Assembly (NCBI GenBank): GCA_964304625.1
Contig: OZ199840.1
Span: 273,509-321,711, forward strand
Direction: 5' to 3'
Source: Kudoa neothunni
Taxonomy: Eukaryota; Animalia; Cnidaria
DNA length: 48,203 nt
The notes below the pieces were generated by a model. That model was not told the DNA's origin. It did not search any database and worked only from the letters and a program-made list of their open reading frames with translations. The translations under genes and the position numbers were made by a program. Shown here piece after piece: positions 455 through 32,351 of this stretch; the first letter of the stretch is position 1; each line of letters starts with the position of its first letter.

Positions 455-3434
455 TTAATCTCTTTTCTTCTTCAATACCACGATGCCAACTATTGCAATA
501 ACCACAACCACAGCAACACATGCAATAATGATTCTAAAATCAGTTAATTCAAATATCAGCACTTAAAAATGTTTACATAAGTTTTGTTTTATCCCTAAAA
601 AATGTTAAATTAAAGAAATCAGTTTACTAAGCTCACCCTGAACTACTCTTTGCTCCTACGATTATAACATTAAATTACATTGTGAACAAATAATATACCT
701 TGTTGTATGTCAGCACCGCCAAAAATTGTATCATCTTCAACACTGTAAACAGTCAAATAATAGTTATTTCCATCAGGTAAATTATTTATTTTGAATTCTT
801 TACAGGTCACAAAGGCAGTACATCTGTCTACGTTTCTTCTCATGCAAGATTTTACTACCGCATTTGACTTGACACTGCTGTTACGTAACTCCCATTTGCA
901 TTTTGATTTATCGTTCATGGTGGCTGGAAGTGTGGTGGTTACAATGAAACTGTTCCCATCACGTGTAATGACGACTGATATCAATTTTGAGGAGTCAGTT
1001 GGGTTTAATTGTGGTGCAGCTAATACAAGTTTCGTTTAAAAAATTCTTAATAGAGACATTAATTGTAATACTTGATTCTATAATATGCTCTTGTTGTGAA
1101 GATTTTCCGATAGCTGTGACTAAAATTTTGTATGTATTTGCTGCTTCATACTCGGGAAATGTTATGGAACTGCAAAAGGGATTTGAAGAACATGTGTTTG
1201 TGCTGCTAGCGGCCTCAGCAAGCTGTGTATCTAAAGATTTCGCTGCTGGCATTAGACCACCATCTGCTACCATTGGCACAGCAATTCTAGCTATGTTGAG
1301 ATCTGCGGAACTTAAACTGGGAGGAGCAGCTGAAGGGGGTGTTGGTGCTACCGGGGCGGTAACAGGTGTCGTTACTTTCGGCACCACTGGACATGTGTAA
1401 TAATCTATGTAATCGTTACCAGTTTTCTTCTTTACGATATAACTGCATGTTGCAGTTGGATCAACGGAATTTAATCTTGCCTTCAATGACAAACCATCCA
1501 AGGTGATCTTGTGTGTTATCGTTAACGTTGTTAATGCTATTAAAAATTTAAAGAGTAAATTATAACTTCAATAACCTGTTCGTATATCTGTGTAATCTTT
1601 TATACCGTAATCCTTATGTGCAATCACCCTGATGTCATAAGGTTTGTTTGGCTCAAGGTCTTCTATCGTAACTTGTTCACTGCAAATTCCTCTACATGGG
1701 GTGTTGCCATTACATTTCGCGTGGAAAAAGCTGTCCAATCCAGCCGGACTCACCAAATATTCACAGGTAGGTTCATTTTTCTTTTGTGCAGATTCAGTCG
1801 TGGTAGCAACCGTAGCTGTAAGAGAGACTGTTGTATCTGTCTTTGTAGGATCAGTTGTTCCATACTCTTTACCTGTTCCCTTTGCTATATATAATTCGTT
1901 ATTTTATACAATAAATACGTTAGAATTTACTTGTTCTTATGAATATATTTTCAGTGAAACTATTTGGATCACTAACTCCCCCAAATGTGATGTCAAGTAT
2001 GTAAGCTTTTCCTGCTGCAAGTCCTTTAATCACTAATGGTGTACAATCAGTTTTGCATCTATTTTCATTGGATCCTCCCCTTTTACTGCCAGTGTCGCAT
2101 GTTGATTCAGTTGGCGAACCTGATGCGATTGTGTCCGCCAAAAAATGTTTAAGAGTACATGAAGTAATTTGTGGACTAGTAGTTCCTTTAAATGAGGTAC
2201 CACCAAACGTAACACCATCCTTAGTATACGCCGAAAGCAAACCTTCACCTGATTCATTAATGGCTAATGAAAATAATACAAAATGAATATTAATCAAAGG
2301 ATTACCAAATTTAATTTGTTCGTAACCTTTTAAATCACCATCAGTGGCTTCTATATCGTGATGCCTTGTTTTGATTAAAATTTTATAAATATTTTTTTCC
2401 GCAGTGCCATTTAGTTCGACGTACTTACAAGGTGCGTAACAACTCTTGTCGGTTCTGCCACAAACGGACGTATATTTTTCAGTATTTCCTGCACTTTGAC
2501 CATTTTTAAGACTAAACAAGCATATTTCAGATGATAACGAATTAGTGAATCTAATTCCGATTTTGCCTTCAGTTTTGTATACAATATAAAACTGAGGCTT
2601 ATAAATGGCTATGTTTTTCTTCATATATTGGTTGGGCATTATATAAAAGAAACTGGGATATTTTCCGCATCTCACTTCGTAATGAGGTAACAATAAATCA
2701 AAATCAACTTTGTTTGTTGAACTCGCAGTATTACAATTTTCCCCCTTGGAACCATCTGCATATTTAGTATCTTTATAATAAATAGGGCAATCTACAGACG
2801 TGCAAGTTTTTGTTTCAAATTTCAGCTGTTCAGTGTCTGTAGACACGGTAATTTGTGGATTAGCCAACAATGCTAAATTTGGTTTATTTTGATACCAAAT
2901 TAAACAAAATTACGTATTGAATATCCGAATACTTTTGATCCTGCTCCATTAACTTTTTCTTTAATAGTAGCTGTGTCAGTGCCAACGTAGACATATATGT
3001 ATTTGGTTCTTGGTGATAGTTTTTCATAGGTGATTGTATTTAAATTACTACCACAGTCGACAACACATTTATTAGGAGCGTTAGTAGTGTCAGTAGCAGT
3101 GCAACCTTGGATATCTGCAAACGCAGCTGGTATTTCTGAATTAGCTGCAATTTCTGCCTCGTTAGATCGTCTTAAAAGGCACTTATTTCCTTCTTGATAT
3201 TCGGAGCCTCCGAGATTGATTTTAATTTTGTCTGGGTCATTATTTGAACCTTTCACAATCTGATATTTCAGCGTTTTTGTCGGAGCTGTGGGTGCAGGTG
3301 AAGCTGCATCTGGTGGGTTTGAAGTTCCATTAGCAATGGCTTTTCTTGATATTAAAACACCTAAACCTACATTAGCATTCAAAATAACTCAGGAAGATAC
3401 CTAAAACAAGGTAGAGAAATCCAGCTATTTTCAT
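455..3434 (-). CDS. Paralogue A: ~863-aa type I membrane protein with tandem 4-Cys FN3-like modules (10 exons)
   Basis: Hand-spliced exons (minus): 3434-3401, 3360-2914, 2872-2306, 2263-1931, 1884-1576, 1536-1072, 1019-699, 655-637, 594-577, 533-455. All introns are GT-AG, 39-52 nt. Total 2592 nt with an open frame. Signal peptide MKIAGFLYLVLGVLISRKAIA; FN3-like motifs such as ITYEKLSPRTKYIYVYV and VTIEDLEPNKPYDIRVIA; C-terminal LIIIIACVAVVVVIAIVGIVVL-KKKRD*. Joins ORFs 2900-3382, 1920-2870, 1568-1756, 995-1501 and 670-984. Confidence 0.88.
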
Positions 3435-3463
3435 GGTTGACAATTAAATGACCTACTAATTGA

Positions 3464-3494
3464 TGGTTCGGAATACAATTGACCCGAATTTCAC
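3464..3494 (-). promoter_or_regulatory. Conserved upstream motif of paralogue A
   Basis: Reverse complement GTGAAATTCGGGTCAATTGTATTCCGAACCA, ~30-60 nt before the ATG. Also present at 16807-16837 and 29271-29301. Confidence 0.5.
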
Positions 3495-4779
3495 TTATTT
3501 ATGGATATAATGATTCATTCATTGTCAGATGGCAATATTTAGACTAGGCAACAATTATCCAAGTTACTACAAAATTAATCTAAATCAATTTTTTGCAATC
3601 TAACTTAAATCGTTGTGGTATATTAATTATGACTTATAATGGAATTAAAATTTTCTCCATGATAAATTGTTTTTACGGAAATATCGAAGTATAATGTTAA
3701 GTTTTAGCAAAATAATGGTAATATTATTTATTATAGTGAGTATTCAATGGTAATGATGTGCTTACCGTTTACCAAAATTCGACATCATGTCGTGACTTTT
3801 TCCGAAGATATAGTTCATTCACTCTAAAAAGTTTCAGCAGACAAAAATAAATTAATTTTTTTGTTTTTAGTGTTCCTAAATTCGTTATCTTAATCCTCGG
3901 TGTTGGGCATTAATCTCTTTACAATAATATTTTGAGTATTGTTTTCCAGGTTTAACACATGTAAATAAACATTTTTGTCAACGTATTCTATCTAATTACT
4001 AAAAAATAATTTTTTAAACAAGCGGATTCCCTTTATTTGCAGATTTAATCAATTAAAAATGGGTAAGGAGACGGCTATTAAATTTCAACCGCTAAACTTC
4101 ATTTATTTTTGCCGATTCTCTCACGATAATTTTTTTACAATTCTACATGTTGGACAAAATCGTTCAATTCTCAAAAAATTTAGTTATAAAATTTAATAAA
4201 TCATCGGATTAATCTCCCAGTTGTGTTATTTAAGCCTGTATTATATATATTAGGATTTAAATTGTTATTTCCTACTTGTATCATGTATACTTCATAGTAT
4301 GCACTTTTCATTGTCCATAATGAATCAGATATTTTTTACCAAATGATCAGATGGAATAGTTCGCGTTAATAATGGTTAGATTCACAATTCGATGGTGTAA
4401 AACTAAGGTAACTCCCCGAACTGGTACTTTGTTTCGGGTTGGAATTTGTTTTATCATCCCCAAAACATAACAGTGAAGATGATATGTATGATTATTTACA
4501 ACTGGAACATGGATGAAACTATTCTATCCGCCTTTGAAAATACTAATGTAACCACAAGAACACCGGGCTATTGTTAAAAAATTAAGAATATTCGTGCGTT
4601 TAATGTTCATAAGCTTAAGCCTTTTGATGGTAAAAAGCATTTCATTCAAAATGAAAAAATAATCCTTCACGGAAAGCAGAAAAATTATTGGGTCGTTGGC
4701 CGGCACCTTATATGAATTTTTTTGAAAACTATGGCGTGCCAATTATTTATCATTTCATCAAATTATGTATCGCAGTAAC

Positions 4780-7334
4780 TGTAATGAGGGAGTATCCATC
4801 TCCAAAAATTCGGCATCTTCCCGTGCACGCGCATTCCAATTGTGTTATAATTTAATTTAACACATTTTTAAAATATTGAGTGATCACAAATCAGACCAAA
4901 ATTTTTATTCTGAAGAGTTACAAAAAATCTCACGTCGGCAACAATCGGACAGCGCGCAATGTAATGCACATACCTTTTCATAACCTTTTTCAGCCTAATT
5001 TGTCATAAATAATTCATGAAATTTATATTTCTAATTTTTATAATATTATCAAATATGTTCTGTGAATTATTAATGAAATTGGACCGGAAGGATATATGTC
5101 AGTTATTTATTGTGTTTTTTAACCTTAAGTTTTCATTTTTTACATTAACGACTCTTAATTGTTACTTATAAATTTATTATTTAGTTCATATATTTTTTTG
5201 GTGTATTAATATTAAATATATAACGGTATACCGAACAAACCATATTGAAGAAATTGAAAACCTTATGATATTAAAAACAATATAATGAATAATTCGTTAA
5301 CTATTTATAATTAGATTATAAACAAGTCCAAAATAAAATATTTAATGTTGATTTGTACAAATATATCAACTACTTTGAGGAACGATCCGTGATAACTATA
5401 ATTCATAATTAATGTATTGCATAATCGTGTTGATTATCAACACTGAGAAACAATTGTGAGTCAAAAATAAAAAATTTGTTTTTCTTAAAAAATTTCATAA
5501 TCTAATTTCATTTATAAGGAAAAATTATTTTTTCATTAATAAAGCCTTAACGGTAAATCATAAACATATATTTTAATTTATTATCATTAAACGAAAATAC
5601 GCGAGAAACCTCAAATATATTTATTGCAAATATAATTTTAATTTTTAGTTAATACTAATACGGTAAAATCTAAAGTTTTCTTAAGTTTTTTGACAAATAG
5701 CAGTATATAAAAGATGAAAGGAATCAAAACACAAATATTTTGTTTTACTAGCTATTATTTAATTAGTAAATAGTAGCGATCGCTGTTAAAATATATTCGA
5801 AGAAATTCCAATATCATTTATGAACGGAACGCGACCATGATTCATGTAGGTTGGAATCCAGCTGATTTCGTGGTACACCGCTCATTTTCCGAATGAGTTT
5901 TGTTTTGAGATGATGCCACACAACCTCGACCGTATTAGTATGGTAACCCTCTGGAGTGACGTACTCTTTAGAATGATTAACGGTTATATAGTTATAGCCG
6001 TAAATTCGGAGAGAGGTATACCCCAACCACTTGTCAGTATAGATTGTAGTCCCGTTTTCAACTTCCTGTAAGACGAGTTGGGTCAACGTTCGTTTATCCC
6101 TTTTTTGGACAATAAAAAATCTAGATTCTAACAATTTGCGTTTGTCATCATCTACAGAGCATTCGCAAATGCCAACAACCCAAGGGCCGTTTATTCTGTA
6201 ACCATACCATTCATTTCTCCGCTGACTTCTCAAAGGAGTCGCTTCACGGAATAACCTAATCCTTAAGAAATGGTTAGGGCTGGCCAACCATCTGTCCATG
6301 CTTAAAAATCTTCCCCGGTTATTTTTACGGCGACCCCTTAATAAACATTCGTCAATTTCGACGATTCGATTTTCTCCGCCCATTTGCTCGCGTCGTTGGA
6401 ACATTTTATAACAAATACTCCACAACGCTGAATACCAAAATGTAACGGTTTTCTCGGTTATTTGAGTTAATGCCACCACCTTGCATCTTTGCTCTTCAAT
6501 ACACCAAAGTTATATTAACTCAAATAGCTGAGACACTGTTAATTTGGATACATTCGTCCCCATCGCGTTATTGATGCCAAAGAAGGTAGAGGTCCTGGGT
6601 GAAAAATGCGTTCTACAGTCGCTCTTAAAAATAATATTTTAAAAACTATACATAAAATAAAAGTCCTTTGAACATGTATACGAGTATTTCTCAATATCAT
6701 CGTCACAAAGATCGATTGAAGTATTGTTTCTTTTTCTCGTTGTAACTTGGAGGCGTAGAGTGTTATACCTGTGGCAATTCTTGCACCGAGCAGGCGTTTT
6801 TTGTAATAGACCCTTATTCGCTAGGTAAGTAAATAGAGCACTCACGTTAAACAAAAGTTTATAAAATTGACGCTGAAGTGAAAATTCCGCCATCGAAAAA
6901 ACTTTTGTTAATCGGATTAAATTATAAAAACATAAATTTTTAAATTTAATGTGAGATAGCAATATATCAGTTACTATTACATCTATAATTATTGAAAATT
7001 CAAAACACCGCTAAATAAAATATCTCCTATCCTGTGTGATTCTTTAATCGCGAGAACATATTTGATAATATTATAAACATTAGAAATATAAATTTCATGA
7101 ATTATTTATGACAAATTAGGTTGAAAAAGGTTATGAAAAGGTATGAGCATTACATTGCGCGCTGTCCGATTGTTGCCGAAGTGAGATTTTTTGCAACTCT
7201 TTAGAATAAAAATTTTGGTCTGATTTGTGATTACTCAATATTTTAAAAATGTGTTAAATTAAATTATAACACAATTGGAATACGCGTGCAAGGGAAGATG
7301 CCGAATTTTTGGAACTGGATACTCCCTCATTACC
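4780..7334 (-). mobile_element. Merlin (IS1016/ISXO2-like) DNA transposon with ~280-bp terminal inverted repeats
   Basis: 4781-~5061 (GTAATGAGGGAGTATCC...AAATATGTTCT) is the near-perfect reverse complement of ~7053-7333 (...GGATACTCCCTCATTAC). The right terminus reads GG on the minus strand. Encloses an ISXO2-type transposase. No target-site duplication (TSD) recognised. Confidence 0.88.
5814..6893 (-). pseudogene. ISXO2/IS1595-family DDE transposase, disrupted
   Basis: ORF 5814-6479 has VEIDEC, WVVGICE, IYTDKWLGY, TVNHS and HTNTVEVVWHHLK motifs typical of DDE_Tnp_IS1595/Merlin. The upstream ORF 6639-6962 carries a CKNC zinc-ribbon-like piece. Stops and frameshifts lie between them. Confidence 0.85.
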
Positions 7335-8423
7335 GTGTCCTTTATGTTTAAAAGAGGGAAATTTCTGTTTTTAAGGTCCATACTCTACTTAGGACTTTAC
7401 CCATACTAACTATCGTACATTCTTGTAATAGAGCATACTTGTAAAATCAGATTTAATGTCCTCTAAAAAGCTCCTAAATTGCCTATATAAAAGGACTCTC
7501 GATCTTATCACATTAGCGGCACACTTTACAGGGTCCAAAACGTGCTTGAATTTCAATGAAGATTTACACAAGCTTTCTTGATGTTTAATACAATGAAAAG
7601 ACAAAATTTTGTGTGATGGGAAATTTTCATTGATTTTACCATTCATCAGTTTTATTAACCCGGAGTGTTTTCCAACGAGTGAAGGCCCTCCATCAGTAGT
7701 GACACTGGTGAGTTTGTCCAAGTTTAAACCAGAACAGTTCCAACTATTCATAACGCTATCAAAAAAATCTTGTCCAGTTGTTGTGTTCTTCAAGTATTCG
7801 AGTGATAAGCGCTCCTCGGTAGTTTCGAAATTATGGTCAATTCCTTTTACAAAAATGAGTAATTGAGTGGTATCGGCAGCATCTTCACGTTCGTTCAAAC
7901 CAATAGAATTGTACTCAAGGTTGGCAATTTTTTTGAACAAAATTTCTTGTGCATTTTGAGATATATTTTCAATCCGTCGAACAATTGTTCTTCGTGATAG
8001 AGGAATAGCTTCAATTTTTGTGATGACTTGAGGATATAAAACACTCATTAATAAACTCTCCATCCGAGAATGCCTTGTTATGTTTCGCAAAATTGTGGGA
8101 AAATATAAAGCTAGTCGTTACTGCATCACCTTGTATGGATGTTGCTTTTCAAAATGAATTTCGTTGGGGTTTTAAATTTTGTACCATATCAGATGACTTC
8201 TTTTTCAATTCTTCGTGGGACAAGTTGCAGCCAAAATTGGAATGCTTGGTTTGATAATGGCGTTTCAAGTTGTATTTTTTGTACACAGCGATTGTGTCTC
8301 AGCAAATCAAACATACATCCTATTATTGATGCTGGTGAAAAAGTACTTCTCAGTCCACTCATGACTGAAACTTTTACATTCATCTTCAATTCTTATTTTT
8401 GTAGATAGATTGAAACTAGCCAT
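7335..8423 (-). pseudogene. hAT (SPIN/Charlie/Buster, GTF2IRD2-like) transposase fragment, truncated at the Merlin element
   Basis: LSRRTIVRRI, DTTQLLIFVKG, TTDGGPSLVG, FHCIKHQESLC and VR*LSMGKVLSRV motifs. A frameshifted N-terminal zinc-finger-like part lies at 8189-8423. Confidence 0.85.
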
Positions 8424-9087: not shown

Positions 9088-10832
9088 TAAATTTATTAGA
9101 AACAAAAACAATAGATTAAGTATGATTACAAAATTTTGGTATCCGAAAAGTTTGCTCTTTGGAGATGCGAAGAAATATATCCAAGGGTTAGAAATTACAA
9201 CATAAAACTACGATGAAGCAATTTGTATGTTACACAACCGATACAACAACATTATGGGAATAAAATCAAATCATTATATGCTGATAAACAAGAACAAACC
9301 TGCAGTAAACAATATTAAATCCATTAATCAAACATTTAACGATATAGAAGTTAACGTCAGATCGTTGGAACCATGGGGAAGAAGACCAATTCACTACTAT
9401 TGGTATCCTTGATATTGAGAAAATTACTATACGAAATCACAAGCCAAATACTACTTGTTAACGATGGTAAAAAATTACAATTGAGACCTCAGGGAAGAAA
9501 ACATCGTCCACATTCTCCACCACAACAGAAAACCTGTGCCTATTGTCATGGTGGTCATTGGTCTGATGAATGTACATTGTACTCAACGCTAGATCTAGAA
9601 AAGAGAAACTAAATGATAAGTGTTTTAATTGCTTGAAAAGTGGACATAAAATACAACTTTGCTTGAAGAAAAAACCATGTTATCATTGTAAAAAAATCAA
9701 AGGTACACCATTCAAGCCGTTGTGAAATAAAATATCCGTCTACAGAAAATTCAGCCACATTGCTAAACACCAAGAAAAACACTCGCCCACAAATAGCAAA
9801 AATAACGCTAAGAAATCCTGAAAACCCGCATCTTAACGTTCCTGCCTCTGCTCTGTTTAGTACTGGTAGCGAACGAACGTTCATTACCCTAAGACTAGCG
9901 AAAATTTTAAACCTTAAAGTTTTAAAAAAAGAATCCATCCACCTGAACAAATTTTCTACCACCAAATCGCAAACGATAGAGAGCCAACTAATGGAATTCC
10001 TAATCGATACCAAAAAAGGTGCGAAACGCGTTCACGCTAATTCTACAAAGAAAATTACATATCCGGTATGTGACCAGCAAATTCCCACCGGTGTAATCAA
10101 ACAATTGGATTATAATGTTATACGGATTAATGCGAGCAAGTACCAAATGATTCATATAAATGTTCTCATCGGTATGGACTACTTTTGGGAAATTATGAGA
10201 TGTGTGACGGAGCAATTGGCACCGGGATTATATATACTTGATACTGATGTTGGTAACGTCTTAGTTGGCAGAATAAACCCCTCAGATTTAAAAAAGGAAA
10301 AACGCTCAACCATATTACTCTGTACAAACATTCACAATGAAACATATTCCATGGTATTTAATGAAGATTCTAATGATGATAAAAATGAATAATTTTGGGC
10401 TGTGGAATCGATCGGTATAAAAGACCTAGACGATAACGAACAGTATGACTTGGAAATCCAATTTGAACAGAATATCAAAAAAATGGGAAAAGATACACAG
10501 TATCACTTCATTGGAAAAAGGATAGTAAAATTCAACCAACCAACTTCAATCTATCGAAAGGTAGACTGATCAGTTTGATTAGAAGAATCAAGGGTCACAT
10601 GAAATTGATAAAATAATATGTGAATATTATCCAAACTCAATTAACAAAAGGTATTATTGAAAAGGTTTCAGACGAAAAGGCGTTGCCAAAAAACCCTCAT
10701 TATATCCCACATCACCATGTTTTCTCCAACAGCGACACTACAAAATTACGCATAGTTTTCGACTCTTCTGCCAGAGTCAATAACCCTATTTACAGTTTAA
10801 ACCAATGTCTGTACAAAGTTCTGATTGTCATA
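9088..10832 (+). mobile_element. BEL/Pao LTR retrotransposon remnant (gag, protease, start of RT)
   Basis: Gag motif GDAKKYIQGLEITT*NYDEAICMLHNRY, three Cys/His knuckles (CAYCHGGHWSDEC, CFNCLKSGH, CYHCKK), degenerate aspartyl protease ALFSTGSERTFIT, VLIGMDYFW, and RT start YIPHHHV...TTKLRIVFDSSA. Many stops and frameshifts. Confidence 0.88.
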
Positions 10833-11660
10833 GGGCATTTTTGTAAATCTCGATGTTTTAAAAATGTGCCTACTTTGCCAGTCGCTTACGAACATTCAAA
10901 AAAAGCTTGGATGAATGGAGTCATCTTTAGGAGATATCTGTTAAAATTGAATAGCTTTTTCAGGAATAAAGACAAAAAGTAACTCCTATTTGTCGACAAT
11001 GCAAGTTGCCATATTCATTCCGACCTAAGTAATATCACCATCGAGTATCTACCCAAGAATAGTACAAATGTGTTGCAGCCCTTGATCAAGGGATTATTCG
11101 TTCCTTTAAGGTTTCGAACGTTTCAAAATTGATACAAAGGAATATTGCGTACGTTGAAGCCAAAATGACTCCTAACCCTCCAGACCATCTAGATGCTTTG
11201 ATGATGATAAAAAATGCTTAACATGATGTTAATCAACGGACTGTCATTAACTGTTTTGAAAATGCTGGTTTCATCAAACAAGATACAAATATTTTAAATG
11301 TAGTCAATATCACTCAAGCAAATGAAAGTATAGAGCCTGAATTGTCTTTGGAAATCGACGAAATAATGAATGAGGAAGATCAGGAACAAACTAAAGCTGA
11401 TTTTGAAGATTTCGAACAATATTCTGATAAACCGGATAATAAATAAGATAAGGAGTTCCAACTCGAAGTTGAAGACAGCGTCACTTCAAAACGCGCACTA
11501 GAGTGTATAAATAAATTGGAAACCTATTTTAGAACTAATAGACTTTAACATTATCGACTTCTTGTGAATATTGAAGAAAACGTTGTTGGAAACATAAACA
11601 AAAATTTAGTTCAAACGAAAATAACAAACTTCTTCCCAAAAACATTGGATAAATCGTAGT
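10833..11660 (+). pseudogene. Tigger/pogo (DDE_1) transposase C-terminal fragment
   Basis: SKKAWMNGVIF, LFVDNASCH, YLPKNSTNVLQP-DQGII and NCFENAGF motifs, joined directly to the Pao RT within ORF 10620-10982. Confidence 0.8.
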
Positions 11661-14502: not shown

Positions 14503-14540
14503 ATTGACTTACTTGTAAATTATTAATACATTATTTTTTG

Positions 14541-16022: not shown

Positions 16023-16806
16023 CTTTAATGGATGAGTAATATTTAAAAATACTTATTTAATGCCTTTAACGTTTTTATTTTATTTTAATTGAAACAAAAA
16101 AGAAAATCGACGCACTAATTTAGCAATATTGTGAATGTAAAACGTACGAATCGATAAAATTAATGTTTCAAAGTTTACTTGATTACTATGCTTCTAATAT
16201 TTTTGAATTCTTAATTATTTAAATCTATAAATTAAGTTTATTAGCTCTAATTTTTAATCTAGTTGGTTTAATTGATTTGATACTAGAGATTTAAAATATT
16301 GCGACAATAATTACCATTCGTTAGACATTTTCCAGCATCTAATACAGTATTTTAACCGGATATGTATTTATCTCCAATTGTAGTTAATAAAGAATCAATA
16401 AAAAAATTTAAAACTCGACCAATGAACACCTTAATAGCATCTACACAATTAGACTATGATTAAATAAATAAACTATGAATTTTATACTTGATAAAATTGT
16501 AATTCTTAATTATATTCATAAATGTAGTCAACATTGCGATTTTTGTGAATTATACAATAGAAAACGAATGGTTCGTAATCCCATTGTCGGCCCCAAAACT
16601 GATATATACTAAATCCTGCCATGGAAATCAGTTTCCTGTTTCACATTCACATTCGAATACAGATTCATTATTTGCTTATGCTCATATTATTTTCGTTTGA
16701 TCTTTTTACCCGGTTTTCGAAAAAAATTGTTTAATAACTTGAGTAATTAGTACCTAGTCTAAGTTTTGCTATCTGACAATGAATGAATCACTATTTCAAT
16801 AAATGG

Positions 16807-16837
16807 GTGAAATTCGGATCAATTGTATTCCGAACCA
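16807..16837 (+). promoter_or_regulatory. Conserved upstream motif of paralogue B
   Basis: GTGAAATTCGGATCAATTGTATTCCGAACCA, an imperfect dyad TTCGGA...CAATTG...TCCGAA, shared with A and C. Confidence 0.5.
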
Positions 16838-16866
16838 ACAATTGGTTGGCCATTTAATTGTCAACT

Positions 16867-19851
16867 ATGAAAATATCTGGATTTCTCTACCTTGTTCTAG
16901 GTATTTTCTGGGTTAATATAATATCAATGTAAGTTTAGGTGTTATAATATCAAGCATAACCAATGCTAATTCAAGTCCTCAAGCTACACCTGCAGCTCCA
17001 AGGAAGACGCTAAAATACCAGATTGTGAAAACTTCAGATGGTAACACAAACGTAATTAAACTCAATCTTGGAGGCTCTGATTACGGTGCCACCCAAAAGT
17101 GTCGTATAATGCGATCCAACGAGGCGGAAATTGCAGATGCTACTGGTGCTACACCAACAGCTGACTTTAAAGACATCAACAGCTGCACTGCTAATGACCC
17201 AAATACAGCTGCTAGTACTAAATGCGTGGTCGGTTGTAATACCGATGTTAACACTATTGAATACGATAAGCTGTCACCAAGAACCAAATACATTTACGTC
17301 TACGTAGGTGCTACCGTACAGGCTGTTACAGGGGAAGATAAAAAAATTGGGGGGAAAGTATTCGGATATTCAATACGTAATTTTATTTAATTTGATATCA
17401 AAATAAACCAAATTTAGCATTGTTGGCTAATCCACAAATTACCGTGTCTACAGACACTGAACAGCTGAAATTTGAAACAAAAACTTGCATATCCGTAGAT
17501 TGCCCTATTTATTATAAAGATACTAAATATGCAGATGGTTCCAAGGGAGAGAATTGTAATACTGCGAGTTCAGAAAACAAAGTTGATTTCGATTTATTGT
17601 TACCTCATTACGAAGTAAGATGCGGAAAATATCCCAGTTTCTTTTATAATATGCCCAATCAATATATGAAAAAAAGCATAGAAATTTATGAGCCTCAGTT
17701 TTATGTTGTTAAAAAAACTGAAAACAAAATGGGAATTAAGTTTACCAATTCCCCATCGTCTGAAATATGCCTATTCAGTATTAAAGATGGACAGGATTCA
17801 GCAAGTGGCGAATCATATACGTCTGCTTGTGGTGGTACTAATAAAATGTGTTATGCTCCTTGTAAGTATGTCGAAATCAATGGAAATGCGGAGAAAAAGT
17901 TTTTTAAAATTTTAATCCAAACAAGGCATCACGACATAAAAACTACTGGTAGTAATTTGGATGGTTACAAACAAACCAAATTTGGTAATCCTTTTAGTAA
18001 CACACATTTGTATTATTTTCTTCAGCATTTACTGAATCGGATGATGGATTGCTTTCTTTTTATACCAGTACCGGTGTTAAGTTTGATGGAAGCTCATTAA
18101 AAACAACAAGTTCGCCAATAATGACTACGTGCACTCTTCAGCGTTATTTTGCTGATAAACCGAAGCCAACCACATTAAACGATGCAAAATGTGACGCTAC
18201 TAGTACAGAGAATGACAAATGCAAAAATGATTGCACAAAATTGACAATTCAAGAACTTACAGAGGGGAAAGCGCATTTGTTTGTAATCACATTTACAACC
18301 TCCAATACTATCCCAACAGGTTTCAAGGAAAAGATATTCCTAAGAACAAGTAAATCATTATATTTATTTTAAAAAATAATTAATTATAAAGAAATCGGAA
18401 GTAGCAAAGCCTATGGGACTACTGATCCTACAAAGACAGATACAACACTCTCTCTTACAGCTATAGCTGCCATCACAACTGACCCTGAACAAAAGAAACA
18501 AGAACCTACCTGTGAGTATTTAATAAGTCCGACTGGATTAGATAGCTTTTTCCACGCGAAATGCAATGGCAACACCCCATGTAGAGGAATTTGCAGTGAA
18601 CAAGTTACGATAGAAGACCTCGAGCCAAACACTCCTTACGACATCAGAGTGATCGCACATAAGGATTACGGCATAAAAGATTACACAGATATACGAACGG
18701 GTTATTGTAGTTTTAATTTACTCTTTAAATTTTTAATAGCGTTAACAACGTTAACCATAACACACAAGATCACATTGGATGGTTTGTCATTGAGGGCACG
18801 ATTAAATTCCGTGGATCCAACTGCAACATGCAGTTATGTCGTACAAAAGAAGACTGGTGACGATTACACAGACTATTACACATGTCCTGTGGTATCGAAA
18901 GTAACGACACCTGTTACCGCCCCAGTGGTACCACCACCCGCTTCAGCTCCTACTTCCAGTTTAAGTTCCGCAGATCTCAACATAGCTAGAATTGCTGTGC
19001 CAATTGTAGCAGATGGTGGTCCAATGCCTGCAGCGAAATCTTCTGTTCCGGACACTTCAGATACACAGCTTTCTGAGGCCGCTAACAGCGCAAACACATG
19101 TTCTTCAAATCCCCTTTGCAGTTCCATAACATTTCCCGAGTATGAAGCAGCAAATACATACAAAATTTTAGTCACAGCTATTGGAAAATCTTCACAAAAA
19201 GAGCATATTATAGAATCAAGTACTACAATTAATTCTTCAATTAATGTCTCTATTAAGAATTGTTTAAACGAAACTTATATTAGGTGCACCACAATTAAAC
19301 CCAACTGACTCCTCAAAATTGATATCAGTCGTCATTACACGTGATGGGAACAGTTTCATTGTAACCACCACAGTTCCATCCAGTATGAACGATAAATCAA
19401 AATGCAAATGGGAGTTACGTAACAGCAGTGTCAAGTCAAATGCGGTAGTAAAATCTTGCATGGGAAGAAGCGTAGACAGATGTGCTGCCTTTGTGACCTG
19501 TAAAGAATTCAAAATAAATAATTTACCTGATGGAAATAATTATTATTTGACTGTTTACAGTGTTGAAGATGCTACAATTTTTGGCGGTGCTGACATACAA
19601 CAAGGTATATCATTTGTTCACAATGCGATTTAATGTTATATATATTATAGGAGCAAAGAGTAGTTCAGGGTGAGCTTAGTAAAATGATTTTTTTAATTTA
19701 ACACTTTTTAGGGATAAAACCAAACTTATGTAAACATTTTTAAATGTTAACATTTGAATTAACTGATTTTAGAATCATTATTGCATGCGTTGCTGTGGTT
19801 GTGGTTATTGCAATAGTTGGCATCGTGGTATTGAAGAAGAAAAGGGATTAA
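16867..19851 (+). CDS. Paralogue B: ~862-aa type I membrane protein with tandem 4-Cys FN3-like modules (10 exons)
   Basis: Exons 16867-16900, 16939-17376, 17418-17984, 18026-18349, 18392-18700, 18740-19219, 19284-19604, 19651-19669, 19712-19729, 19773-19851. Introns are GT-AG of 38, 41, 41, 42, 39, 64, 46, 42 and 43 nt. 2589 nt with an open frame. Signal peptide MKISGFLYLVLGVIISSITNA; TM helix plus KKKRD*. Confidence 0.9.
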
Positions 19852-20927: not shown

Positions 20928-20968
20928 TTAACCCTCCCGGTTAGAACTGGGGTCATTTGTGACCCCAG
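20928..20968 (+). mobile_element. Orphan piggyBac-type terminus
   Basis: TTAA-CCCTCCCGG followed by the palindrome CTGGGGTCA-tttg-TGACCCCAG. No partner end found. Confidence 0.5.
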
Positions 20969-22882: not shown

Positions 22883-24323
22883 CTGTGTATCAGTACAGAG
22901 GGTGCGGGAGTCATTTTAGAGTAAATTTAAAAATTAATCTTAGCTTATTCATTTCGCAATTTTCGTTAGTCCCCGTTTAAATCATGTAAGGACGTAATGT
23001 ACAATAATATTTCTGATTGTTTTGATATTAGATTCGATGATTTATTCTGTTTGATTCTGCGAAATAGCGCAGTAAGGTAATAATTTATATTAAACCTGTT
23101 TTGCTAATAAAATCTAACTCTCGTTATTCTCATGTAAAATCGCAACTTTGTCTATCTTTCATAATAACATATTTATATGATTAAGCTGTAATTAGGTTGT
23201 CAACATTTTTGTCTACTTAGGAATAATCTAAATCCACGAAAATAAAACCACGATATACTTTAAATTTGTCTTCTGTCTAAATTTGAGATCCATCATTTAA
23301 ACGGTATAGTTTTTATTATTTTACGTTCAAAGTTTTACTTTCGAATTTGTAATTTTCTTCTGATGTAAATCTATGTTAATTTGTTCTTTAGGAGTATAAG
23401 GTAAAAACAAGGATCAAAGCATTCATTTATACACATAATTAAATGAATACCAATTTTAACAATACATATTAGTTATTTTTATTCAAGTATATTTAGAAGA
23501 CATATTTTTGGATCTACTGAATTTTTATTAACCCACAGCCTCAAAATTTAATTAACATATGAGTCAATATAGAATAAGGAAGCCGCTAGATTTATTTATC
23601 ACAGGATAACATATGAAACAAGTTTATCGACTTCATTAAATACAAATAATAAGTGTTGAAATTCATTAAACTCTGAAAACGATTTTCATGTTTCATAGTC
23701 CAACAAAAGGTCCTGCATTAAATTACTTATGAAAACCCCAGCGAGAGCAAGAGAACCGCCAGATCAAATAAATACTAAATAACATTGAATTTTTAAATAA
23801 TGTTTCATGTGAACTATACGAATAGGGTATTTTTGATTAGCTCATTTTATTTTCACCTTTAAGTACAGAACTTATTTATGTGACCATACTTTTTATAATT
23901 TAATATTACGTTTATATTTATTTTTTACGTCTAATATTTTGGAATAATTATAATGACTTAATTTATTATTTTACATAAAATAGTATATATAAGCAGGAAT
24001 AAATAATAGCCCTAATCATTGAATGTTAAATCAAGAGGAGTGAAAAGATAATGTTCATCCGTTTTCAATTATGCATAGAAAATTTAATTAGCCAAAACAT
24101 TTTGGTATTAATTTATTTTATAAGTATTTGGGAAAATTTGATGTTAAAATATAAACAAAAATAATAAAAATTTTAATTTTAAAACATTCTTCACTGGTAT
24201 TATTATTTTCGCATTTAAACAACAAGAATAATTAAGTCTTGGCATTCATATGGAGGAGGGGATGAGAAATGAACGCGGAAATTAGGATTGAGGTACGGGT
24301 GTAAAATTTGAAGGGAAACATTG
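22883..24323 (-). mobile_element. Non-autonomous hAT-like element, copy 2 (inverted)
   Basis: Reverse complement of 34423-35866, almost identical in the internal stretches compared. Termini CTGTGTATC and GGGAAACATTG. Confidence 0.85.
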
Positions 24324-24756
24324 CGTTAGACATACAAAACTCACAAACAAACAATTAATCTGTAAATAACGCTGCCTTTCGATAATTACCGACAGTTAAT
24401 ATCATAAGAAGATTGGCACTACAATCCGTGTCAGATTTTCATATTAAAGAACTTTTCGTTAGCGCCAAAAACAAACGAACGAAAGAGTAAGTATGAACTA
24501 ATCGGAACACGTGCTGATCATTTCAGGTCGCATGATGAGTTAAGTTTTTACTGTTTTCCGTCTTGAAATGTGCTACGTTACTCATAAAACAATAATATGT
24601 AACTTAATTCAATATAATATTTACAATAAATCAATATAAATCGAGTTCAAAAGTTAAATAACATTTTCTAACCTGAGGGTATCCTACGTGGCAAGGTTCC
24701 GCGTTTTCCAAATTAATCAAAAAAATTTTCATGACCCAAGGTTGGGGAACATTGAA

Positions 24757-27700
24757 CTAGGCGATGACGAACAATATGACTTGGAAATCCAATTAAAACA
24801 GAACATCAACAAAATGGGAAAAGATACACGGTATCACTTCTTGGAGAAAGGATAGTTAAATTCTTCCAACCAACTTCAATCTATCGAAAGGTAGATTGAT
24901 TAGTTTGATTTAAAGAATCAAGGGTGACAAGGAATTGATAAAACAATATGATGATATCATCCAAACTCGATTAACAGATGGTACTATTGAAAAGGTTTCG
25001 GACGAAAAGGCATTGCTACAAAACTCTCATTATATCTCACATCATCGTGTTTTCTCCAACAACGACACTACAAAATTACGCATAGTTTTCGACGATTCTG
25101 CCAGAGTCAATAACTTTACCTGTAGTTTAAAACGATGTCCCTACAAAAGTCCGATTGTCATTAGGGATATGTGTGGTATCTTACTACGATTTCGTCTCAG
25201 AAGAATAATATTCACAGCAGACATTGAAAAGGCGTATCATCAATTAGAACTCTCGACGGAGGATCGTGACTATACTCGCTTCTTATGGATACAGGATATA
25301 GTAAAGCCGATGATGGATCAACACATCGCTACATTCAGGTTCAAAGAGTACCATTTGACATCATCTGTTCATTATTCCTACTCCATGCCACAATTTCCCA
25401 CCATATTCGAAATCAACCCGATGATAATTTGGTCGAACTCCAACACTCGATATATGCTGATAATTTTCTACATGGTTGCAATAACGAAGATGAAGCATTG
25501 GAATTATATTACAAAGTTAAAGACCTATTTAATGATGCATCGCTAAATATGAGGAAATGGAATCCGAATTCAAACAAGATTCTATCTCAGATAACCCTTG
25601 TGAAATGAATGGAAGTAAGCATCTGAAAATACTTAGGTTGATTTGGAACACAACTGGTGACACAATAAGCATAAGATGCACATTCAGCGTGACGATGAGG
25701 AATCACCTAAATAAAAGAATTGTCTTACAAGATATGGCAAAAATATATGATCTATTTGGTTTCGTTACACCTGTAACTATTATCCTTAGAATGTATCTTC
25801 AGTCTTTGTGGAAAATGGAATTACAATTGGATACATCTCTAAGAAAAAGGACGCGTTGTTAAGTGGAATAATCTGGTAGAACAGTTCAACAAAATACCAG
25901 GTCTAAAGTTTAGTAGAACATTCATCACACATTCAGTAGATATCGAAACCGAACTGAATCTATTTTGTTTTCGTGATACCTCTCAAAATGCAGATGCATG
26001 TGTTGTTTACCTATTGTTGGAAAAGCATGCTACCAAGGAATCATTATTTATTCTCGCAAAGTCGAAATTAGCACCATTGAAAACAACGACTATTCCCAAA
26101 CATGAACTCATGGGAATGCTTCTTGGCGTAGAACTGTTAAAATATGTCTCAACGCTCACAAAACAACCAATTAAAAATGATAAATTTTTTGCGAGTTGAA
26201 ATGTGTATTGTATTCGGCAGAGAATGGTAAATATTCTTCAATCGCAGAAAACAAAATCATAGAAGAAATACGAGAAATGAACTATATTTCCCTAAATTAC
26301 ATTCCTTCAAATTTAAATCCAGCTGATGTGACAACGAGAGGAATTGACACAAATGACAACGAAATGTTAGAAAATTGGATGAATGGACCTCAATTTATCT
26401 TAGAAAAAAACACGGAAGACATGTTATAGCATTAATGCAACCTAGATCAAGTAACTCAATAAATGATAATGAAATTTTATGTTAAGGTATCGACGTGAAA
26501 AGATTTTCAAATTTTCACACTTTGATACGAACAGTAGCTTGTTGAAAAAGAATTATAACTCTGTGAAAGAAAATACCAACATCGCCAAACAAATTCACGA
26601 TAGAAGAAATTAAAGCAGCCAAACTATTAATTATAAGATGTCAAAAATCTTATTTCATGAAAACCTTCAACACAATAAGAAAGAAGGAAGGGGCTAAATT
26701 GTGCATTCAGTTTGGATTATTCATCAAAAGAAATGGGTTGCTTAAATGTGGTGGTAGATTCGGTTTGTCAAATTTGTCAGAGGATAAAATTCATCCATTA
26801 TAGCTATCTAAGAAAAGTCATGTAACTAAATTAATAATTATGCAAATACACCAAATGATTGGACATGGCGGAACGAATGCAACTCTAGCTCGACTAATGC
26901 AAATTTATTGGCCACAACATGCAAGATCTGTTGTATGGAAAACACTAAAATCATGTCATCAATGCAATGGTTTTAATAAACGACCATACAAATTACCATC
27001 GTTTCCAAACCTACCTGATTTCAGACTGAGAATCACCCAACCATTCAATTTTACAGGTATCAACTACGCTTGACCTTTTCAAATCTATTAACGAAACGAC
27101 ATATCAGAAGTATTGATCTGCCTGCTTACCTGCACTACTATCCGAGTTGTCCATCTGGAAATCACAAAATCTCTAAGTGGTGAAGAATTTCTAAATTATC
27201 TTAGAAGATTTATTGGTAAACGAGGATTACCTGAACTAATCATATCATATAATGCCAAACAATTCAAATTGATGTCGAAGGTATTATCAAAACTATAAAA
27301 ACAAAAGGAGATCACACCACCATCAATTGAGAACTACTCTAATCAAGGCTTGATCAAATGGAAATTCATCGTAGAGTTTTCTCCGTGGAGAGGGGAATTC
27401 TAAGAAAGGTTGATCGGTCTTGTCAAATTTTCTATGAAGAAGTTACTCTTATTCACAAAATATGATTACGAAAAATTTCCTACCTTAATTGTGGAGATAG
27501 AATCCATTATCAACATCTACCTGCTGATTTTTGTGGATCCAAATGTTCTAACAGCTTCACTAACTCCAACAAACATTCTTTGTCTAAACCTAAGATTCCT
27601 AAACACTGAAAATCTGGAGACCACTGAAGAAGAATTCATACCTAATCGTGCGTCAACATCACAGGAAATAATTATTCAAAACTGGAAAATAGGACAGAAC

Positions 27701-28000
27701 CTTCTAACGACACTTTGGAAATCATGGAAATAATGTTATCTCCTACATTTAGGAGAAAGATATAATTCCGAGCACGTACAACACAAAAGCCTTACTCCAA
27801 GATCCAAAAATCGGTGGAATTGTCCACATCATGGAACCAACAAAAAGAAATTGCTGGCGTATTGGACGTATATTACTCTTAAACCAAAATTCAATAAATC
27901 AACTAATTTCCGCACCTATCAAATGCTCCGACGGCAAAGAAATCAGGTGTTCCATCAAATTTCTTTGCAAATTTGAAAATGGCCCCTCGGAATGTTGTTG
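24757..28000 (+). mobile_element. BEL/Pao pol remnant (RT, RNase H region, integrase) ending at a probable 3' LTR start
   Basis: TTKLRIVFDDSA, ADIEKAYHQL, RDYTRFLW, YADN, AKSKLAPLKTTTIPKHEL, NPADVTTRG, HQMIGHGG...CHQC, VVHLEI and RRFIGKRG motifs. GGCCCCTCGGAA is followed by TGT at 27993. Heavily disrupted. Preceded by a hAT-like end GGTTGGGGAACATTG at ~24740-24754. Confidence 0.9.
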
Positions 28001-29270: not shown

Positions 29271-29301
29271 GTGAAATTCGGGTCAATTGTATTCCGAACC
29301 A
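29271..29301 (+). promoter_or_regulatory. Conserved upstream motif of paralogue C
   Basis: GTGAAATTCGGGTCAATTGTATTCCGAACCA, identical to A. Confidence 0.5.
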
Positions 29302-29330
29302 TCAATTGGTACTTCATTTAATTATCAACC

Positions 29331-32300
29331 ATGAAAATATCTGGATTTCTCTATTTTTTTTTAGGTAGCTCCTTGAGTTAATTTTAATGCTAATATAAGT
29401 TCAGGTGTTTTAATATCAACCACAGCCAATACTAATGAACGTCCAAATCCTCAAGCTGCACCTGTAGCCCCAACAAAAACGTTGGCATATGAAATTGAGA
29501 AAGGTGCGACTAGTAGCGCAGACCAAATTAAAATCAAACTTGGAGGCACTGAATATGGAACTGGCAAAAAATGCCTTATACGTCGATCTAACGAAGCAGA
29601 AATCGCGGCGACTACCTCTGGTCAGGTACCAGCAGCTGAGTTTAGAGACATCGACACTTGTGTTGCTAAAGTTAGTGATTCTGGTGTTAGTGATAAATGT
29701 GTTGTCGAATGTAATACTGACGCGAATAAAATCACCTACGATAAACTCTCACCAAGGACCAAATACATATATGTCTACGTAGGCACTGTTGCAACTGACA
29801 TTAAAGAGAAAACTAACGGACCAGGAGCAAAAGTATTCGGATATTCAATACGTAAATCAATTTAATTTAACATAAAAATAAATTGAATTTAGCATTGTTG
29901 GCTAATCCACAAATTAGCGTGTCTACGGTTACAAGCGATACCGACAAAAATAGGCTGAAATTCGCAGCAAAAACATGTGCACCTGTAGATTGTCCTATTT
30001 ATTATAAAGACATAAAATATGATGATGGTACCGCAGGGACCACTTGTGTTGAAGAAAATACCAAAAATACAGTTGATTATGATTTACTGTTACCGCATTA
30101 CGAAGTGAGGTGCGGAAATTATCCCAGTTTCTTTTACAATATGCCCAATCAATATATGAAGAAAACCATAGATATTTATAAGCCTCAGTTTTATATTGTA
30201 GAAAAAAATGAAGGAAAAATCGGAATTAAATTCACTAATTCTCCATCGTCTGAAATCTGTCTTTTCAGTCTTAAAAATGGTCAAAGTGCAGGAAATAATG
30301 AAAAATATACGTCCGTTTGTGGCGGAACTGACAAGAGTTGTTATGCTCCATGTAAGTACGTCGAACTCAATGGCATTGCGGGGAAAAAGATTTATAAAAT
30401 TTTAATCAAAACAAGACATCACGACATAGAAGCTACTAGTGGTGATTTCAAGGGTTACGAACAAACTAAATTTGGTAATCCTTAAATCAATATGCAGTTT
30501 GTATTATTTTTATTAGCTGTTACTGAACAAACTGGAGGACTCCTGTCAGTTTACACGGATCAGGGAGTGTCATTTGATAGTACCTTATTTAAAAGAGAGT
30601 CTGAACCAATAATCGATAAATGTACTCTAAAACACTACTCTGCAGACAAAATCAAACCAGACACCTTAACTACAACAACGTGTGATGGGACCAGCTCCAG
30701 TAGTTCCAATTGCAAAACTGATTGCTCAACGAAATTGGTGATTCAAACACTTACACCGGGGAAAGCGTACATGATTGAGATCGCGTTTGAAGCGAGTAAT
30801 TCTGCAAAGGATTTTAATGAACATATATTCATAAGAACAGGTAAATCATCATACTTATATTAAAAAATAATGAATTATAAAGCAAACGGAAATGGGAAAA
30901 CGTATGGAACTACTGATCCTACAAAAACAGATACAACACTCTCTCTTACAGCTATTGGTGGGAATTCCCCATCAGACAAGACAACTGAACCTACCTGTGA
31001 GTATTTAATAAGTCCGACTGGATTAGATAGCTTTTTCCACGCGAAATGCAATGGTAACGCCCCGTGCAGAGGAATTTGCAGCGAACAAGTTACGATAGAA
31101 GACCTTGAGCCAAACACACCTTATGACATCAGGGTGATCGCACATAAGGATTACGGCATAAAAGATTACACAGATATACGAACAGGTTATTGAAGTTATA
31201 ATTTATTCTGTAAATTTTTAATAGCATTAACAACATTAACGATAACACATAAAATCACCTTGGATGGTTTGTCATTGAAGGCACGATTAAATTCCGTGGA
31301 TCCAACTGCAATTTGTAGTTATGTGGTACAAAAGAAGACTGGTAACGATTACACAGATTATTACACATGTCCAGAGGTGCCGAAAGTAACGACACCTCTC
31401 ACCGCCCCAGTAGCACCAGCACCAGTACCCCCTTCAGCTGCTCCTCCCAGTTTAAGTTCAGCAGGTCTCAACATAGCTAGAATTGCTGTGCCAATTGTAG
31501 CAGATGGTGGCCCAATACTAGCAGCGAAATCTTCAGTTCCGGTCACTTCAGATACACAGCTTGCTGATGTCGCGAACAGCGCAAACACATGTTCTTCAAA
31601 CCCCTTTTGCAGTTCCATAACATTTCCCGAGTATGAAGCAGCAAATACATACAAAATATTAGTCACAGCTATCGGAAAATCTTCACAACAAGAGCATATC
31701 ATAGAATCAAGTATTACAATTAATGCTTCAATTAATGTCTCTATTAAGAATTGTTTAAACCAAACTTATATTAGGTGCACCACAATTAAACCCAACTGAC
31801 TCCTCAAAATTGATATCAGTCGTCATTACACGTGATGGGAACAGTTTCATTGTAACCACCACACTTCCAGCCACTATGAACGATAAATCAAAATGCAAAT
31901 GGGAGTTACGTAACAGCAGCGTCAAGTCAAATGCGGTAGTAAAATCTTGCATGGGAAGAAGCGTAGACAGATGTGCTGCCTTTGTGACCTGTAAAGAATT
32001 CAAAATAAATAATTTACCTGATGGAAATAATTATTATTTGACTGTTTACAGTGTTGAAGATGCTACAATTTTTGGCGGTGCTGACATACAACAAGGTATA
32101 TCATTTGTTCACAATGCGATTTAATGTTATATATATTATAGGAGCAAAGAGTAGTTCAGGGTGAGCTTAGTAAAAATGATTTTTTTTAATTTAACACTTT
32201 TTAGGGATAAAACCAAACTTATGTAAACATTTTTAAATGTTAACATTTGAATTAAACTGATTTTAGAATCATTATTGCATGCGTTGCTGTGGTTGTGGTT

Positions 32301-32351
32301 ATTGCAATAGTTGGCAATCGTGGTATTGAAGAAGAAAAGGGATTAAATTAA
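29331..32351 (+). CDS. Paralogue C: type I membrane protein with tandem 4-Cys FN3-like modules (10 exons); 1-nt insertion in the last exon changes the tail
   Basis: Exons 29331-29364, 29405-29851, 29893-30474, 30517-30840, 30883-31185, 31225-31710, 31775-32095, 32142-32160, 32205-32222, 32267-32351. All introns are GT-AG. An extra A at 32316-32317 (GGCAATCG vs GGCATCG) gives ...IAIVG-NRGIEEEKGLN*. Confidence 0.87.

What the first reader, a model, noticed from the sequence alone, without database searches (positions are those of the whole stretch)
455..32351. Three-gene family of modular Cys-FN3 surface proteins hidden by tiny introns: candidate variant surface antigen or receptor system
Seen: about 20 apparently unrelated short ORFs splice with GT-AG introns into three ~860-aa genes with identical 10-exon structure, signal peptide, repeated ectodomain, one TM helix and no signalling tail. 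Divergence is polarised. The modules in exons 2 and 4 differ strongly between copies, with indels, while exons 5-10 are near-identical. Known: a variable distal part on a conserved membrane-proximal part, in multicopy genes within a transposon-rich region, is typical of host-interaction and recognition families. FN3-plus-anchor antigens exist in cestodes (EG95, 45W), but I do not recognise this multi-module Cys-rich form. Inference: a lineage-specific diversifying surface-protein system.
Basis: partly seen in the sequence, partly recalled or inferred. Interest (0 to 1): 0.9.

Follow-up and report, generated by a model that had tools for sequence, protein, structure and literature searches.

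The report
Mosaic FN3 surface-protein gene family
Three related genes, hidden by 40-base introns, encode an undescribed family of membrane-anchored proteins built from stacked cysteine-bearing fibronectin-type-III domains that swap DNA segments with each other; its only relatives come from unnamed organisms in fish-associated samples, so it is probably a variable surface or adhesion protein of a fish parasite, though nothing yet shows antigenic switching.

Summary
Three 10-exon genes (863, 862, 872 aa) have GT-AG introns of 38-64 nt, a signal peptide, phase-1 Cys-bearing modules, two micro-exons and a TM helix with a 5-residue tail. Copy C is frameshifted in its last exon. A fourth copy probably starts just past the window end. 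Relatives at about 30-50% identity occur in five unannotated assemblies and keep the exon layout; one lacks intron 2, which confirms that splice. FN3 is shown for exon 5 (Pfam) and variable exon 4 (AlphaFold/Foldseek), and inferred for exons 2, 6 and 7. dN/dS is 0.49 in exons 2+4 and 0.32 in exons 3+5+6, never above 1. The host is probably a fish parasite (myxozoan or acanthocephalan; unresolved). It is not EG95, Alr or VSP by their defining features. Verdict: a new variant of a known kind, a conversion-diversified FN3 surface family. Antigenic variation is untested.

The parts
455..3434 (-). Gene A, 10 exons (3434-3401, 3360-2914, 2872-2306, 2263-1931, 1884-1576, 1536-1072, 1019-699, 655-637, 594-577, 533-455), 863 aa, intact
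16867..19851 (+). Gene B, 10 exons (16867-16900, 16939-17376, 17418-17984, 18026-18349, 18392-18700, 18740-19219, 19284-19604, 19651-19669, 19712-19729, 19773-19851), 862 aa, intact
29331..32351 (+). Gene C, 10 exons (29331-29364, 29405-29851, 29893-30474, 30517-30840, 30883-31185, 31225-31710, 31775-32095, 32142-32160, 32205-32222, 32267-32351), 872 aa; last exon frameshifted relative to A and B
16939..17376 (+). Exon 2 (gene B shown): distal 4-Cys module, 54-62% identical between copies, with indels; FN3-like by weak profile match to exon 4
   Evidence: E 0.003; best reversed control 0.03
17418..17984 (+). Exon 3 (gene B shown): 188-aa family-signature region, 40-48% identical to distant relatives. 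The C-terminal half has the 4-Cys module pattern; the N-terminal half is unassigned. Contains a switch point between exchanged tracts
30517..30840 (+). Exon 4 (gene C shown): most variable module (44-52%); AlphaFold model pLDDT 77 is a beta-sandwich whose top Foldseek matches are FN3 domains
18392..18700 (+). Exon 5 (gene B shown): FN3 domain above the Pfam gathering score (26.6 bits vs 25), 4 conserved Cys
18740..19604 (+). Exons 6 and 7 (gene B shown): membrane-proximal 4-Cys modules, homologous to each other (94% probability). Exon 6 carries a Pro/Ala-rich insertion that is absent or short in relatives
19651..19851 (+). Micro-exons 8 (19 nt) and 9 (18 nt) and TM exon 10 with a 5-residue basic tail (gene B shown)
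16727..16866 (+). Conserved block of about 130-140 nt upstream of the start codon in all three copies (promoter or 5' UTR; function not tested)
32316..32317 (+). Site of the 1-nt insertion in gene C exon 10 relative to A and B
47522..48203 (-). Sequence matching the 3' flank of genes B (70% over 705 nt), A and C: probable downstream flank of a fourth copy lying just beyond the window end on the minus strand

Best explanation
An ancient multigene family of type-I surface proteins in an AT-rich, short-intron animal, most likely a fish parasite. Each gene gives a rod of about six Cys-bearing FN3-like domains, mostly one per phase-1 exon, plus one unassigned region, anchored by one TM helix with no signalling tail, so it can only act outside the cell as an adhesin or coat protein. 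The family diversifies by local duplication, by gain and loss of whole exon modules, and by segmental gene conversion or unequal crossing-over between copies. Exchange keeps the membrane-proximal part uniform and reshuffles parts of exon 3, while exons 2 and 4 escape exchange and accumulate substitutions and indels under weaker purifying selection. Shown: gene structure, FN3 fold of two modules, mosaic ancestry, dN/dS contrast, module loss in a relative. Inferred: expression, surface location, disulfide pairing, parasitic host, a host-facing role.
For: Gene models and layout conserved in relatives. FN3; modules related to each other (ex4-ex5 E 1.6e-5, ex6-ex7 1e-7, ex4-ex7 0.0016, ex2-ex4 0.003). 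Mosaicism: A and B differ by 4-6% over the 5' part of exon 3 while both differ from C by 24-30%; A and C are closest in the 3' part of exon 3; B and C differ by 0-4% from exon 7 into the 3' flank; longest shared runs P = 0.0002 (A-B, B-C) and 0.004 (A-C) by permutation. dN/dS 0.49 (0.37-0.66) in exons 2+4 against 0.32 (0.24-0.41) in exons 3+5+6, bootstrap P 0.013. Five different exon-5 paralogues, mostly 37-50% identical to each other, in one gut metagenome. L003 goes from exon 5 to the TM exon with no exon 6-7 match. Sample context: the label RIIS20-1 fits the codfish intestine study PMC7054092; SRR33849685 is 19 numbers from a skate WGS run.
Against: No transcript, protein or localisation data. 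dN/dS is nowhere above 1, and three sequences with partly saturated dS give little power. Only 3-4 copies are visible here. Taxon and sample identities are inferred: the accession was not found in the paper or its supplement. Copy C may be defective. The permutation test does not fully remove rate differences along the gene.
Confidence: 0.55

Rival explanations
1. An ordinary structural adhesion or coat protein under birth-and-death and concerted evolution. The variable exons are simply those that diverged too far to be converted, and the variation has no function.
For: dS tracks dN along the gene and dN/dS is below 1 throughout; non-coding 3' sequence is homogenised too; the copies lie among many transposons.
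Against: dN/dS is higher in exons 2 and 4 than in their neighbours. The conserved exon 3 sits between two variable exons, so divergence is not a simple gradient. Deeply diverged paralogues are kept in several species.
Confidence: 0.2
2. A self-recognition or cell-sorting system of the organism itself, working like Hydractinia Alr1/Alr2: homophilic binding through variable distal domains.
For: One domain per exon, single-pass topology, clustered paralogues and a short exon whose skipping would shift frame near the membrane are also reported for Alr genes (PMC9546547). If the source is a myxozoan it is a cnidarian.
Against: Alr proteins carry 1-3 V/I-set Ig domains and one FN3-like fold, and many have ITAM/ITIM tails. 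Here the modelled variable domain is FN3 and tails are 5-20 residues. No allelic data.
Confidence: 0.12
3. A true antigenic-variation repertoire: many genes, one expressed at a time, with switching or mosaic creation under host antibody pressure.
For: Conserved membrane-proximal end with a short tail, variable outer domains and conversion tracts match the layout of known variant antigens (established knowledge of VSP, VSG and msg families). Antigenic variation has been proposed for myxozoans (PMC8481699; 10.64898/2026.02.11.705288).
Against: Few copies seen; each has its own conserved upstream block and full exon set, with no sign of silent cassettes or an expression site; two of six modules carry most of the variation while the others stay 70-97% identical and would share epitopes.
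Confidence: 0.1
4. The three copies are assembly artefacts (haplotigs or collapsed repeats).
For: Near identity of the B and C 3' ends and a frameshift in C could include consensus errors.
Against: Exons 2 and 4 differ by 38-56% in protein sequence, and flanks diverge about 200 nt upstream and 250 nt downstream.
Confidence: 0.03

Closest known systems
Taeniid oncosphere antigens EG95 / 45W / TSOL18
   Same: Parasite multigene family; signal peptide, FN3 ectodomain, C-terminal anchor; host-facing (PMC2671473).
   Different: EG95 has three coding exons, one FN3 domain, a GPI anchor and introns of hundreds of bases. Here there are 10 exons, about six 4-Cys FN3-like modules and a TM helix with a basic tail. 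No such protein appeared among the search hits.
Hydractinia allorecognition family (Alr1, Alr2 and paralogues)
   Same: Clustered single-pass surface genes, one domain per exon, FN3-like fold with invariant cysteines, frame-shifting short exon near the tail (PMC9546547).
   Different: [quoted passage not shown] This family stacks FN3-like modules and has almost no tail.
Diplomonad and Sphaerospora molnari VSPs
   Same: Signal peptide, Cys-bearing ectodomain, single TM, short tail, multigene.
   Different: VSPs are over 10% Cys with more than five CXC or CXXC motifs. Here Cys is 2.5-4.3% per exon with no CxxC, and the fold is FN3.
Generic FN3-repeat receptors and adhesion proteins (RPTPs, NCAM, Dscam, cytokine receptors)
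   Same: Tandem FN3 domains in phase-1 exons; weak sequence and fold matches.
   Different: Matches cover only the last strands of exon 5 (at most 18 bits), and none of the ten long FN3 proteins found matches exons 2, 3, 4, 6 or 7. There is no phosphatase, kinase or signalling tail.

Membership tests
Fibronectin type III superfamily (domain level) | Pfam PF00041 score above the curated cut-off | tested here: met
   Exon 5: 25.8 and 26.6 bits against 25; 9 of 12 exon-5 family members match at E up to 0.1. The other exons tested do not match.
Fibronectin type III superfamily (domain level) | FN3 beta-sandwich fold in the variable modules | tested here: met
   Exon 4 model pLDDT 77; the top 50 Foldseek matches are mostly FN3 domains, best E 0.006, probability 1.0, TM 0.55-0.68. 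The alignment used included exon-5 rows, which could bias the model towards FN3.
Fibronectin type III superfamily (domain level) | Exons 2, 3, 6 and 7 also FN3 | tested here: inconclusive
   Profile links to exons 4-5 at E 0.002-0.01 for exons 2, 6 and 7; not above reversed controls for either half of exon 3. The single-sequence model of exons 2-3 failed (pLDDT 34).
EG95/45W oncosphere antigens | One FN3 domain in a three-exon gene (EG95, PMC2671473) | tested here: not met
   10 exons, about six modules.
EG95/45W oncosphere antigens | GPI anchor | tested here: inconclusive
   The hydrophobic helix is followed by a basic tail in A, B and relatives, which fits a TM helix; no GPI predictor was available.
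Hydractinia Alr family | 1-3 V/I-set Ig domains followed by a single FN3-like fold | tested here: not met
   No Ig V/I-set Pfam match in any exon tested; exons 4 and 5 are both FN3.
Hydractinia Alr family | Homophilic allele-specific binding and high allelic polymorphism | not testable with these tools
   Needs population sequencing and aggregation assays.
Variant-specific surface proteins (VSP) | Over 10% Cys and more than five CXC/CXXC motifs | tested here: not met
   2.5-4.3% Cys and no CxxC in any ectodomain exon; definition.
Antigenic-variation system (functional class) | Multigene repertoire with variable exposed and conserved membrane-proximal parts | tested here: met
   small repertoire as far as seen (3-4 copies here, at least 5 in one relative).
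Antigenic-variation system (functional class) | Recombination or conversion creating mosaics | tested here: met
Antigenic-variation system (functional class) | Positive selection on exposed sites | tested here: inconclusive
   Exon-wide dN/dS 0.48-0.50 in exons 2 and 4, upper bounds 0.72-0.74; site-level tests need more sequences.
Antigenic-variation system (functional class) | Mutually exclusive, switching expression | not testable with these tools
   No expression data.
Signalling receptor (RPTP, RTK, cytokine receptor) | Cytoplasmic catalytic domain or signalling motifs | tested here: not met
   Tail of 5 residues in A and B, and 7-19 residues after the hydrophobic stretch in four relatives.

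The most novel reading that the evidence does not exclude
This is a bona fide variant-antigen or host-recognition repertoire of an animal parasite of fish (myxozoan or acanthocephalan), built from FN3 scaffolds with variable loops, diversified by exon-module shuffling and segmental conversion, and expressed in an exclusive or stage-switching way.
Probability: 0.12. Interest if true: 0.85.

Novelty: new variant of a known kind. Interest (0 to 1): 0.5.

Why it matters
Fish parasites such as myxozoans and acanthocephalans have large numbers of orphan genes and few characterised surface proteins. This family has a recognisable fold, a conserved gene layout across very diverged species and direct evidence of sequence exchange between copies. 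It gives a concrete candidate for testing how such parasites attach to hosts or vary their surface, and the conserved membrane-proximal domains are natural diagnostic or vaccine candidates. It also shows how genes with 40-nt introns are missed by ORF-based annotation: no full-length member turned up among 1.84 billion representative proteins.

Tried and rejected
Pfam on exons 2, 3, 4, 6, 7: nothing above cut-off. PDB sequence search with the exon-3 profile: nothing. AlphaFold of L008 exons 2-3 without an alignment: pLDDT 34, discarded. JGI metagenome and GTDB scans with the exon-3 profile: no relatives; the exon-5 alignment was too diverse to scan. The ten long FN3 proteins were rejected as generic. 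Taxon identification failed: the URB1-like neighbour in L002 found no homologue, the Ufd2 fragment in L003 had no PDB match, window ORFs are not in the collection, the SAMEA and SRR31175926 accessions are not in the paper library. Dicyemids are disfavoured because their median intron is 27 nt. Rfam: no match. No further module copies inside the window. A literature search for myxozoa with fibronectin type III expansion returned no paper. VSP, EG95, Alr and signalling-receptor membership were rejected as listed.
Full report
Observation. Self-comparison of the window shows three copies of a 3.4-kb unit at 82-83% nucleotide identity, one inverted. Splice-site mapping gives three 10-exon genes: A 3434..455 on the minus strand, B 16867..19851 and C 29331..32351, of 863, 862 and 872 codons. 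All 27 introns are GT-AG and 38-64 nt long, exons contain no stops, and exons 2-7 begin and end in phase 1. Exons are 38-39% GC and introns 19-21%; each intron carries a stop or breaks frame in at least two copies. Exon 1 and the start of exon 2 look like a signal peptide (by eye). Exon 10 holds the only strongly hydrophobic stretch, followed in A and B by a five-residue basic tail. Copy C has one extra base at 32316-32317 relative to A and B, which changes the end of the protein. The last 680 bases of the window match the 3' flank of the three genes, so a fourth copy probably follows. The neighbouring Kunitz gene has introns of the same size.

Method limit. The joined protein was not searched or folded, so that step is left out.

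Relatives. An exon 3-4 ORF found one relative; an exon 5-6 ORF searched against 1.84 billion representatives found nine exon-sized relatives and ten generic FN3 proteins; an exon-5 profile added one more. None carries a name. Their contigs come from five assemblies: ERZ28624939 (six contigs), ERZ4740390, ERZ795007, SRR31175926 and SRR33849685, with GC from 21 to 38%. They carry the same exons in the same order at about 25-50% identity with short introns at the same places. L008 encodes exons 2 and 3 as one ORF, which independently confirms intron 2. Four loci end in small exons, a TM exon and a short tail. L003 has no exon 6-7 match and carries a long charged stretch before its exon-5 domain; L007 has a low-complexity insertion in the exon before exon 5. 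One sample holds five exon-5 paralogues, mostly 37-50% identical to each other, while the three window copies form their own well-supported group. The family is therefore old, multicopy in several species and modular, and the window shows a recent local expansion.

Organism. Not resolved. Kunitz domains, Bel/Pao, piggyBac and Merlin-type elements point to an animal (established knowledge). The label RIIS20-1 fits the codfish intestine metagenomes of PMC7054092, but the accession was not found in that paper. SRR33849685 is close in number to a skate genome run, which is only a hint. Myxozoa fit well: Kudoa neothunni has 30.4% genomic GC, 36.8% exonic GC and 49-nt introns (PMC12239612), against 31%, 38-39% and 42 nt here. 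Against that, LTR elements other than Gypsy/DIRS1 are reported as nearly absent in myxozoans, and the window has Bel/Pao remnants. Acanthocephala also fit: Pomphorhynchus laevis is 32.9% GC and repeat-rich (PMC7310846) and Echinorhynchus gadi is the commonest adult acanthocephalan of cod (PMC2503959). I put Myxozoa somewhat ahead; this is inference.

Domains. Exon 5 passes the Pfam FN3 cut-off. The most variable module, exon 4, gave an AlphaFold model of pLDDT 77 whose top Foldseek matches are FN3 domains; exon-5 rows were part of the alignment. Profile comparisons link exon 4 to 5 (E 1.6e-5), 6 to 7 (1e-7), 4 to 7 (0.0016), 2 to 4 (0.003) and 5 to 7 (0.007), against a best reversed control of 0.03. 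Exon 3 is the best-conserved part among distant relatives; its second half has the four-cysteine pattern and its first half is unassigned. The long FN3 hits match only the last strands of exon 5, so no orthology to a known receptor was found.

How the copies diverge. Protein identity between copies is 54-62% (exon 2), 70-80% (3), 44-52% (4), 82-87% (5), 87-89% (6) and 93-97% (7). dS follows the same course: 0.64, 0.48, 0.85, 0.32, 0.17, 0.03, and introns 7-9 are identical between B and C. Selection on the protein cannot homogenise silent sites, introns and flanks, so the 3' part has been exchanged recently. The closest pair changes along the gene: A with B from intron 2 through the 5' part of exon 3, A with C in the 3' part of exon 3, and B with C from exon 7 into the 3' flank, with shared runs longer than in permutations (P 0.0002, 0.004, 0.0002). 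dN/dS is 0.49 in exons 2+4 and 0.32 in exons 3+5+6 (bootstrap P 0.013), with upper bounds below 1. This shows weaker constraint or some diversifying sites in exons 2 and 4, and does not show positive selection.

Mechanism. The best reading (0.55) is a tailless, membrane-anchored FN3 rod acting at the cell surface as adhesin or coat protein, diversified by duplication, module gain and loss and segmental conversion. Shown: gene structure, fold of two modules, mosaicism, the dN/dS contrast, a shortened relative. Inferred: expression, surface location, parasitism, a host-facing role. Rivals are functionless concerted evolution of a structural protein (0.2), Alr-like self-recognition (0.12), true switching antigenic variation (0.1) and assembly artefact (0.03).

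Comparison with known systems. It works most like EG95/45W in being an FN3 surface multigene family, and like Alr in being a one-domain-per-exon clustered family, but fails defining features of both: EG95 has three exons, one FN3 and a GPI anchor; Alr has V/I-set Ig domains and often ITAM/ITIM tails. It is not a VSP, since Cys is 2.5-4.3% with no CxxC against more than 10%. The S. molnari genome preprint does not mention fibronectin, and a search for a myxozoan FN3 expansion found no paper; the library lacks most subscription journals, so prior description is not excluded.

Verdict. The finding is real and apparently undescribed, and the mosaic exchange is a solid addition. It is a new variant of a known kind of system.

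Noticed in passing
window 41926-43450 (+): Secreted multi-Kunitz-type gene with 41-49 nt introns and an acidic Thr/Ser-rich C-terminus; the last domain matches Pfam Kunitz_BPTI at E 1e-17.
   Followed up: partly
window 12048-13935 (+): piggyBac-type transposase ORF of 562 aa (PF13843) bounded by 25-nt perfect inverted repeats, the left one beginning at the ORF's first ATG.
   Followed up: partly
window 4778-7336: Merlin/IS1595-type element with 284-nt terminal inverted repeats at 96% and a broken transposase on the minus strand.
   Followed up: partly
window 38300-40417: Degenerate piggyBac-type element with terminal inverted repeats and a fragmented transposase.
   Followed up: partly
window 9760-10835 and 24754-27733: Bel/Pao LTR retrotransposon remnants (DUF1758, RVT_1, Peptidase_A17); relevant because such elements are reported as rare in myxozoans.
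   Followed up: partly
window 14540-16011, 22885-24322, 34424-35864: Unclassified 1.45-kb AT-rich repeat in three copies; two are 97% identical and inverted; no terminal inverted repeats found.
   Followed up: no
window 7410-8090 (-): ORF that looks like a hAT/SPIN-type transposase fragment by eye; no Pfam match at E 0.01.
   Followed up: no
window 44270-45043 (+): Fragmented ORFs with a WD40-like look by eye; no Pfam match.
   Followed up: no
window 47522-48203: Matches the 3' flank of genes A, B and C; a fourth family member probably lies just beyond the window.
   Followed up: partly
L003 241-1000: Short family member: exon 5 split by a long Glu/Lys/Gly-rich stretch, no match to exons 6-7, then a micro-exon and the TM exon.
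   Followed up: partly
L004 about 635-640: Relative with an in-frame stop inside exon 3 and an atypical downstream module; probably a pseudogene.
   Followed up: no
L002 3130-6069 (-) and L003 1467-2844 (+): Very diverged housekeeping neighbours (URB1/NopRA1-like, below cut-off; Ufd2/UBE4-like, above cut-off) with no close database relatives, consistent with a fast-evolving, unannotated lineage.
   Followed up: partly
window 16727-16866 and equivalents in A and C: Conserved upstream block containing a short inverted repeat about 60 nt before the start codon in all three copies.
   Followed up: no
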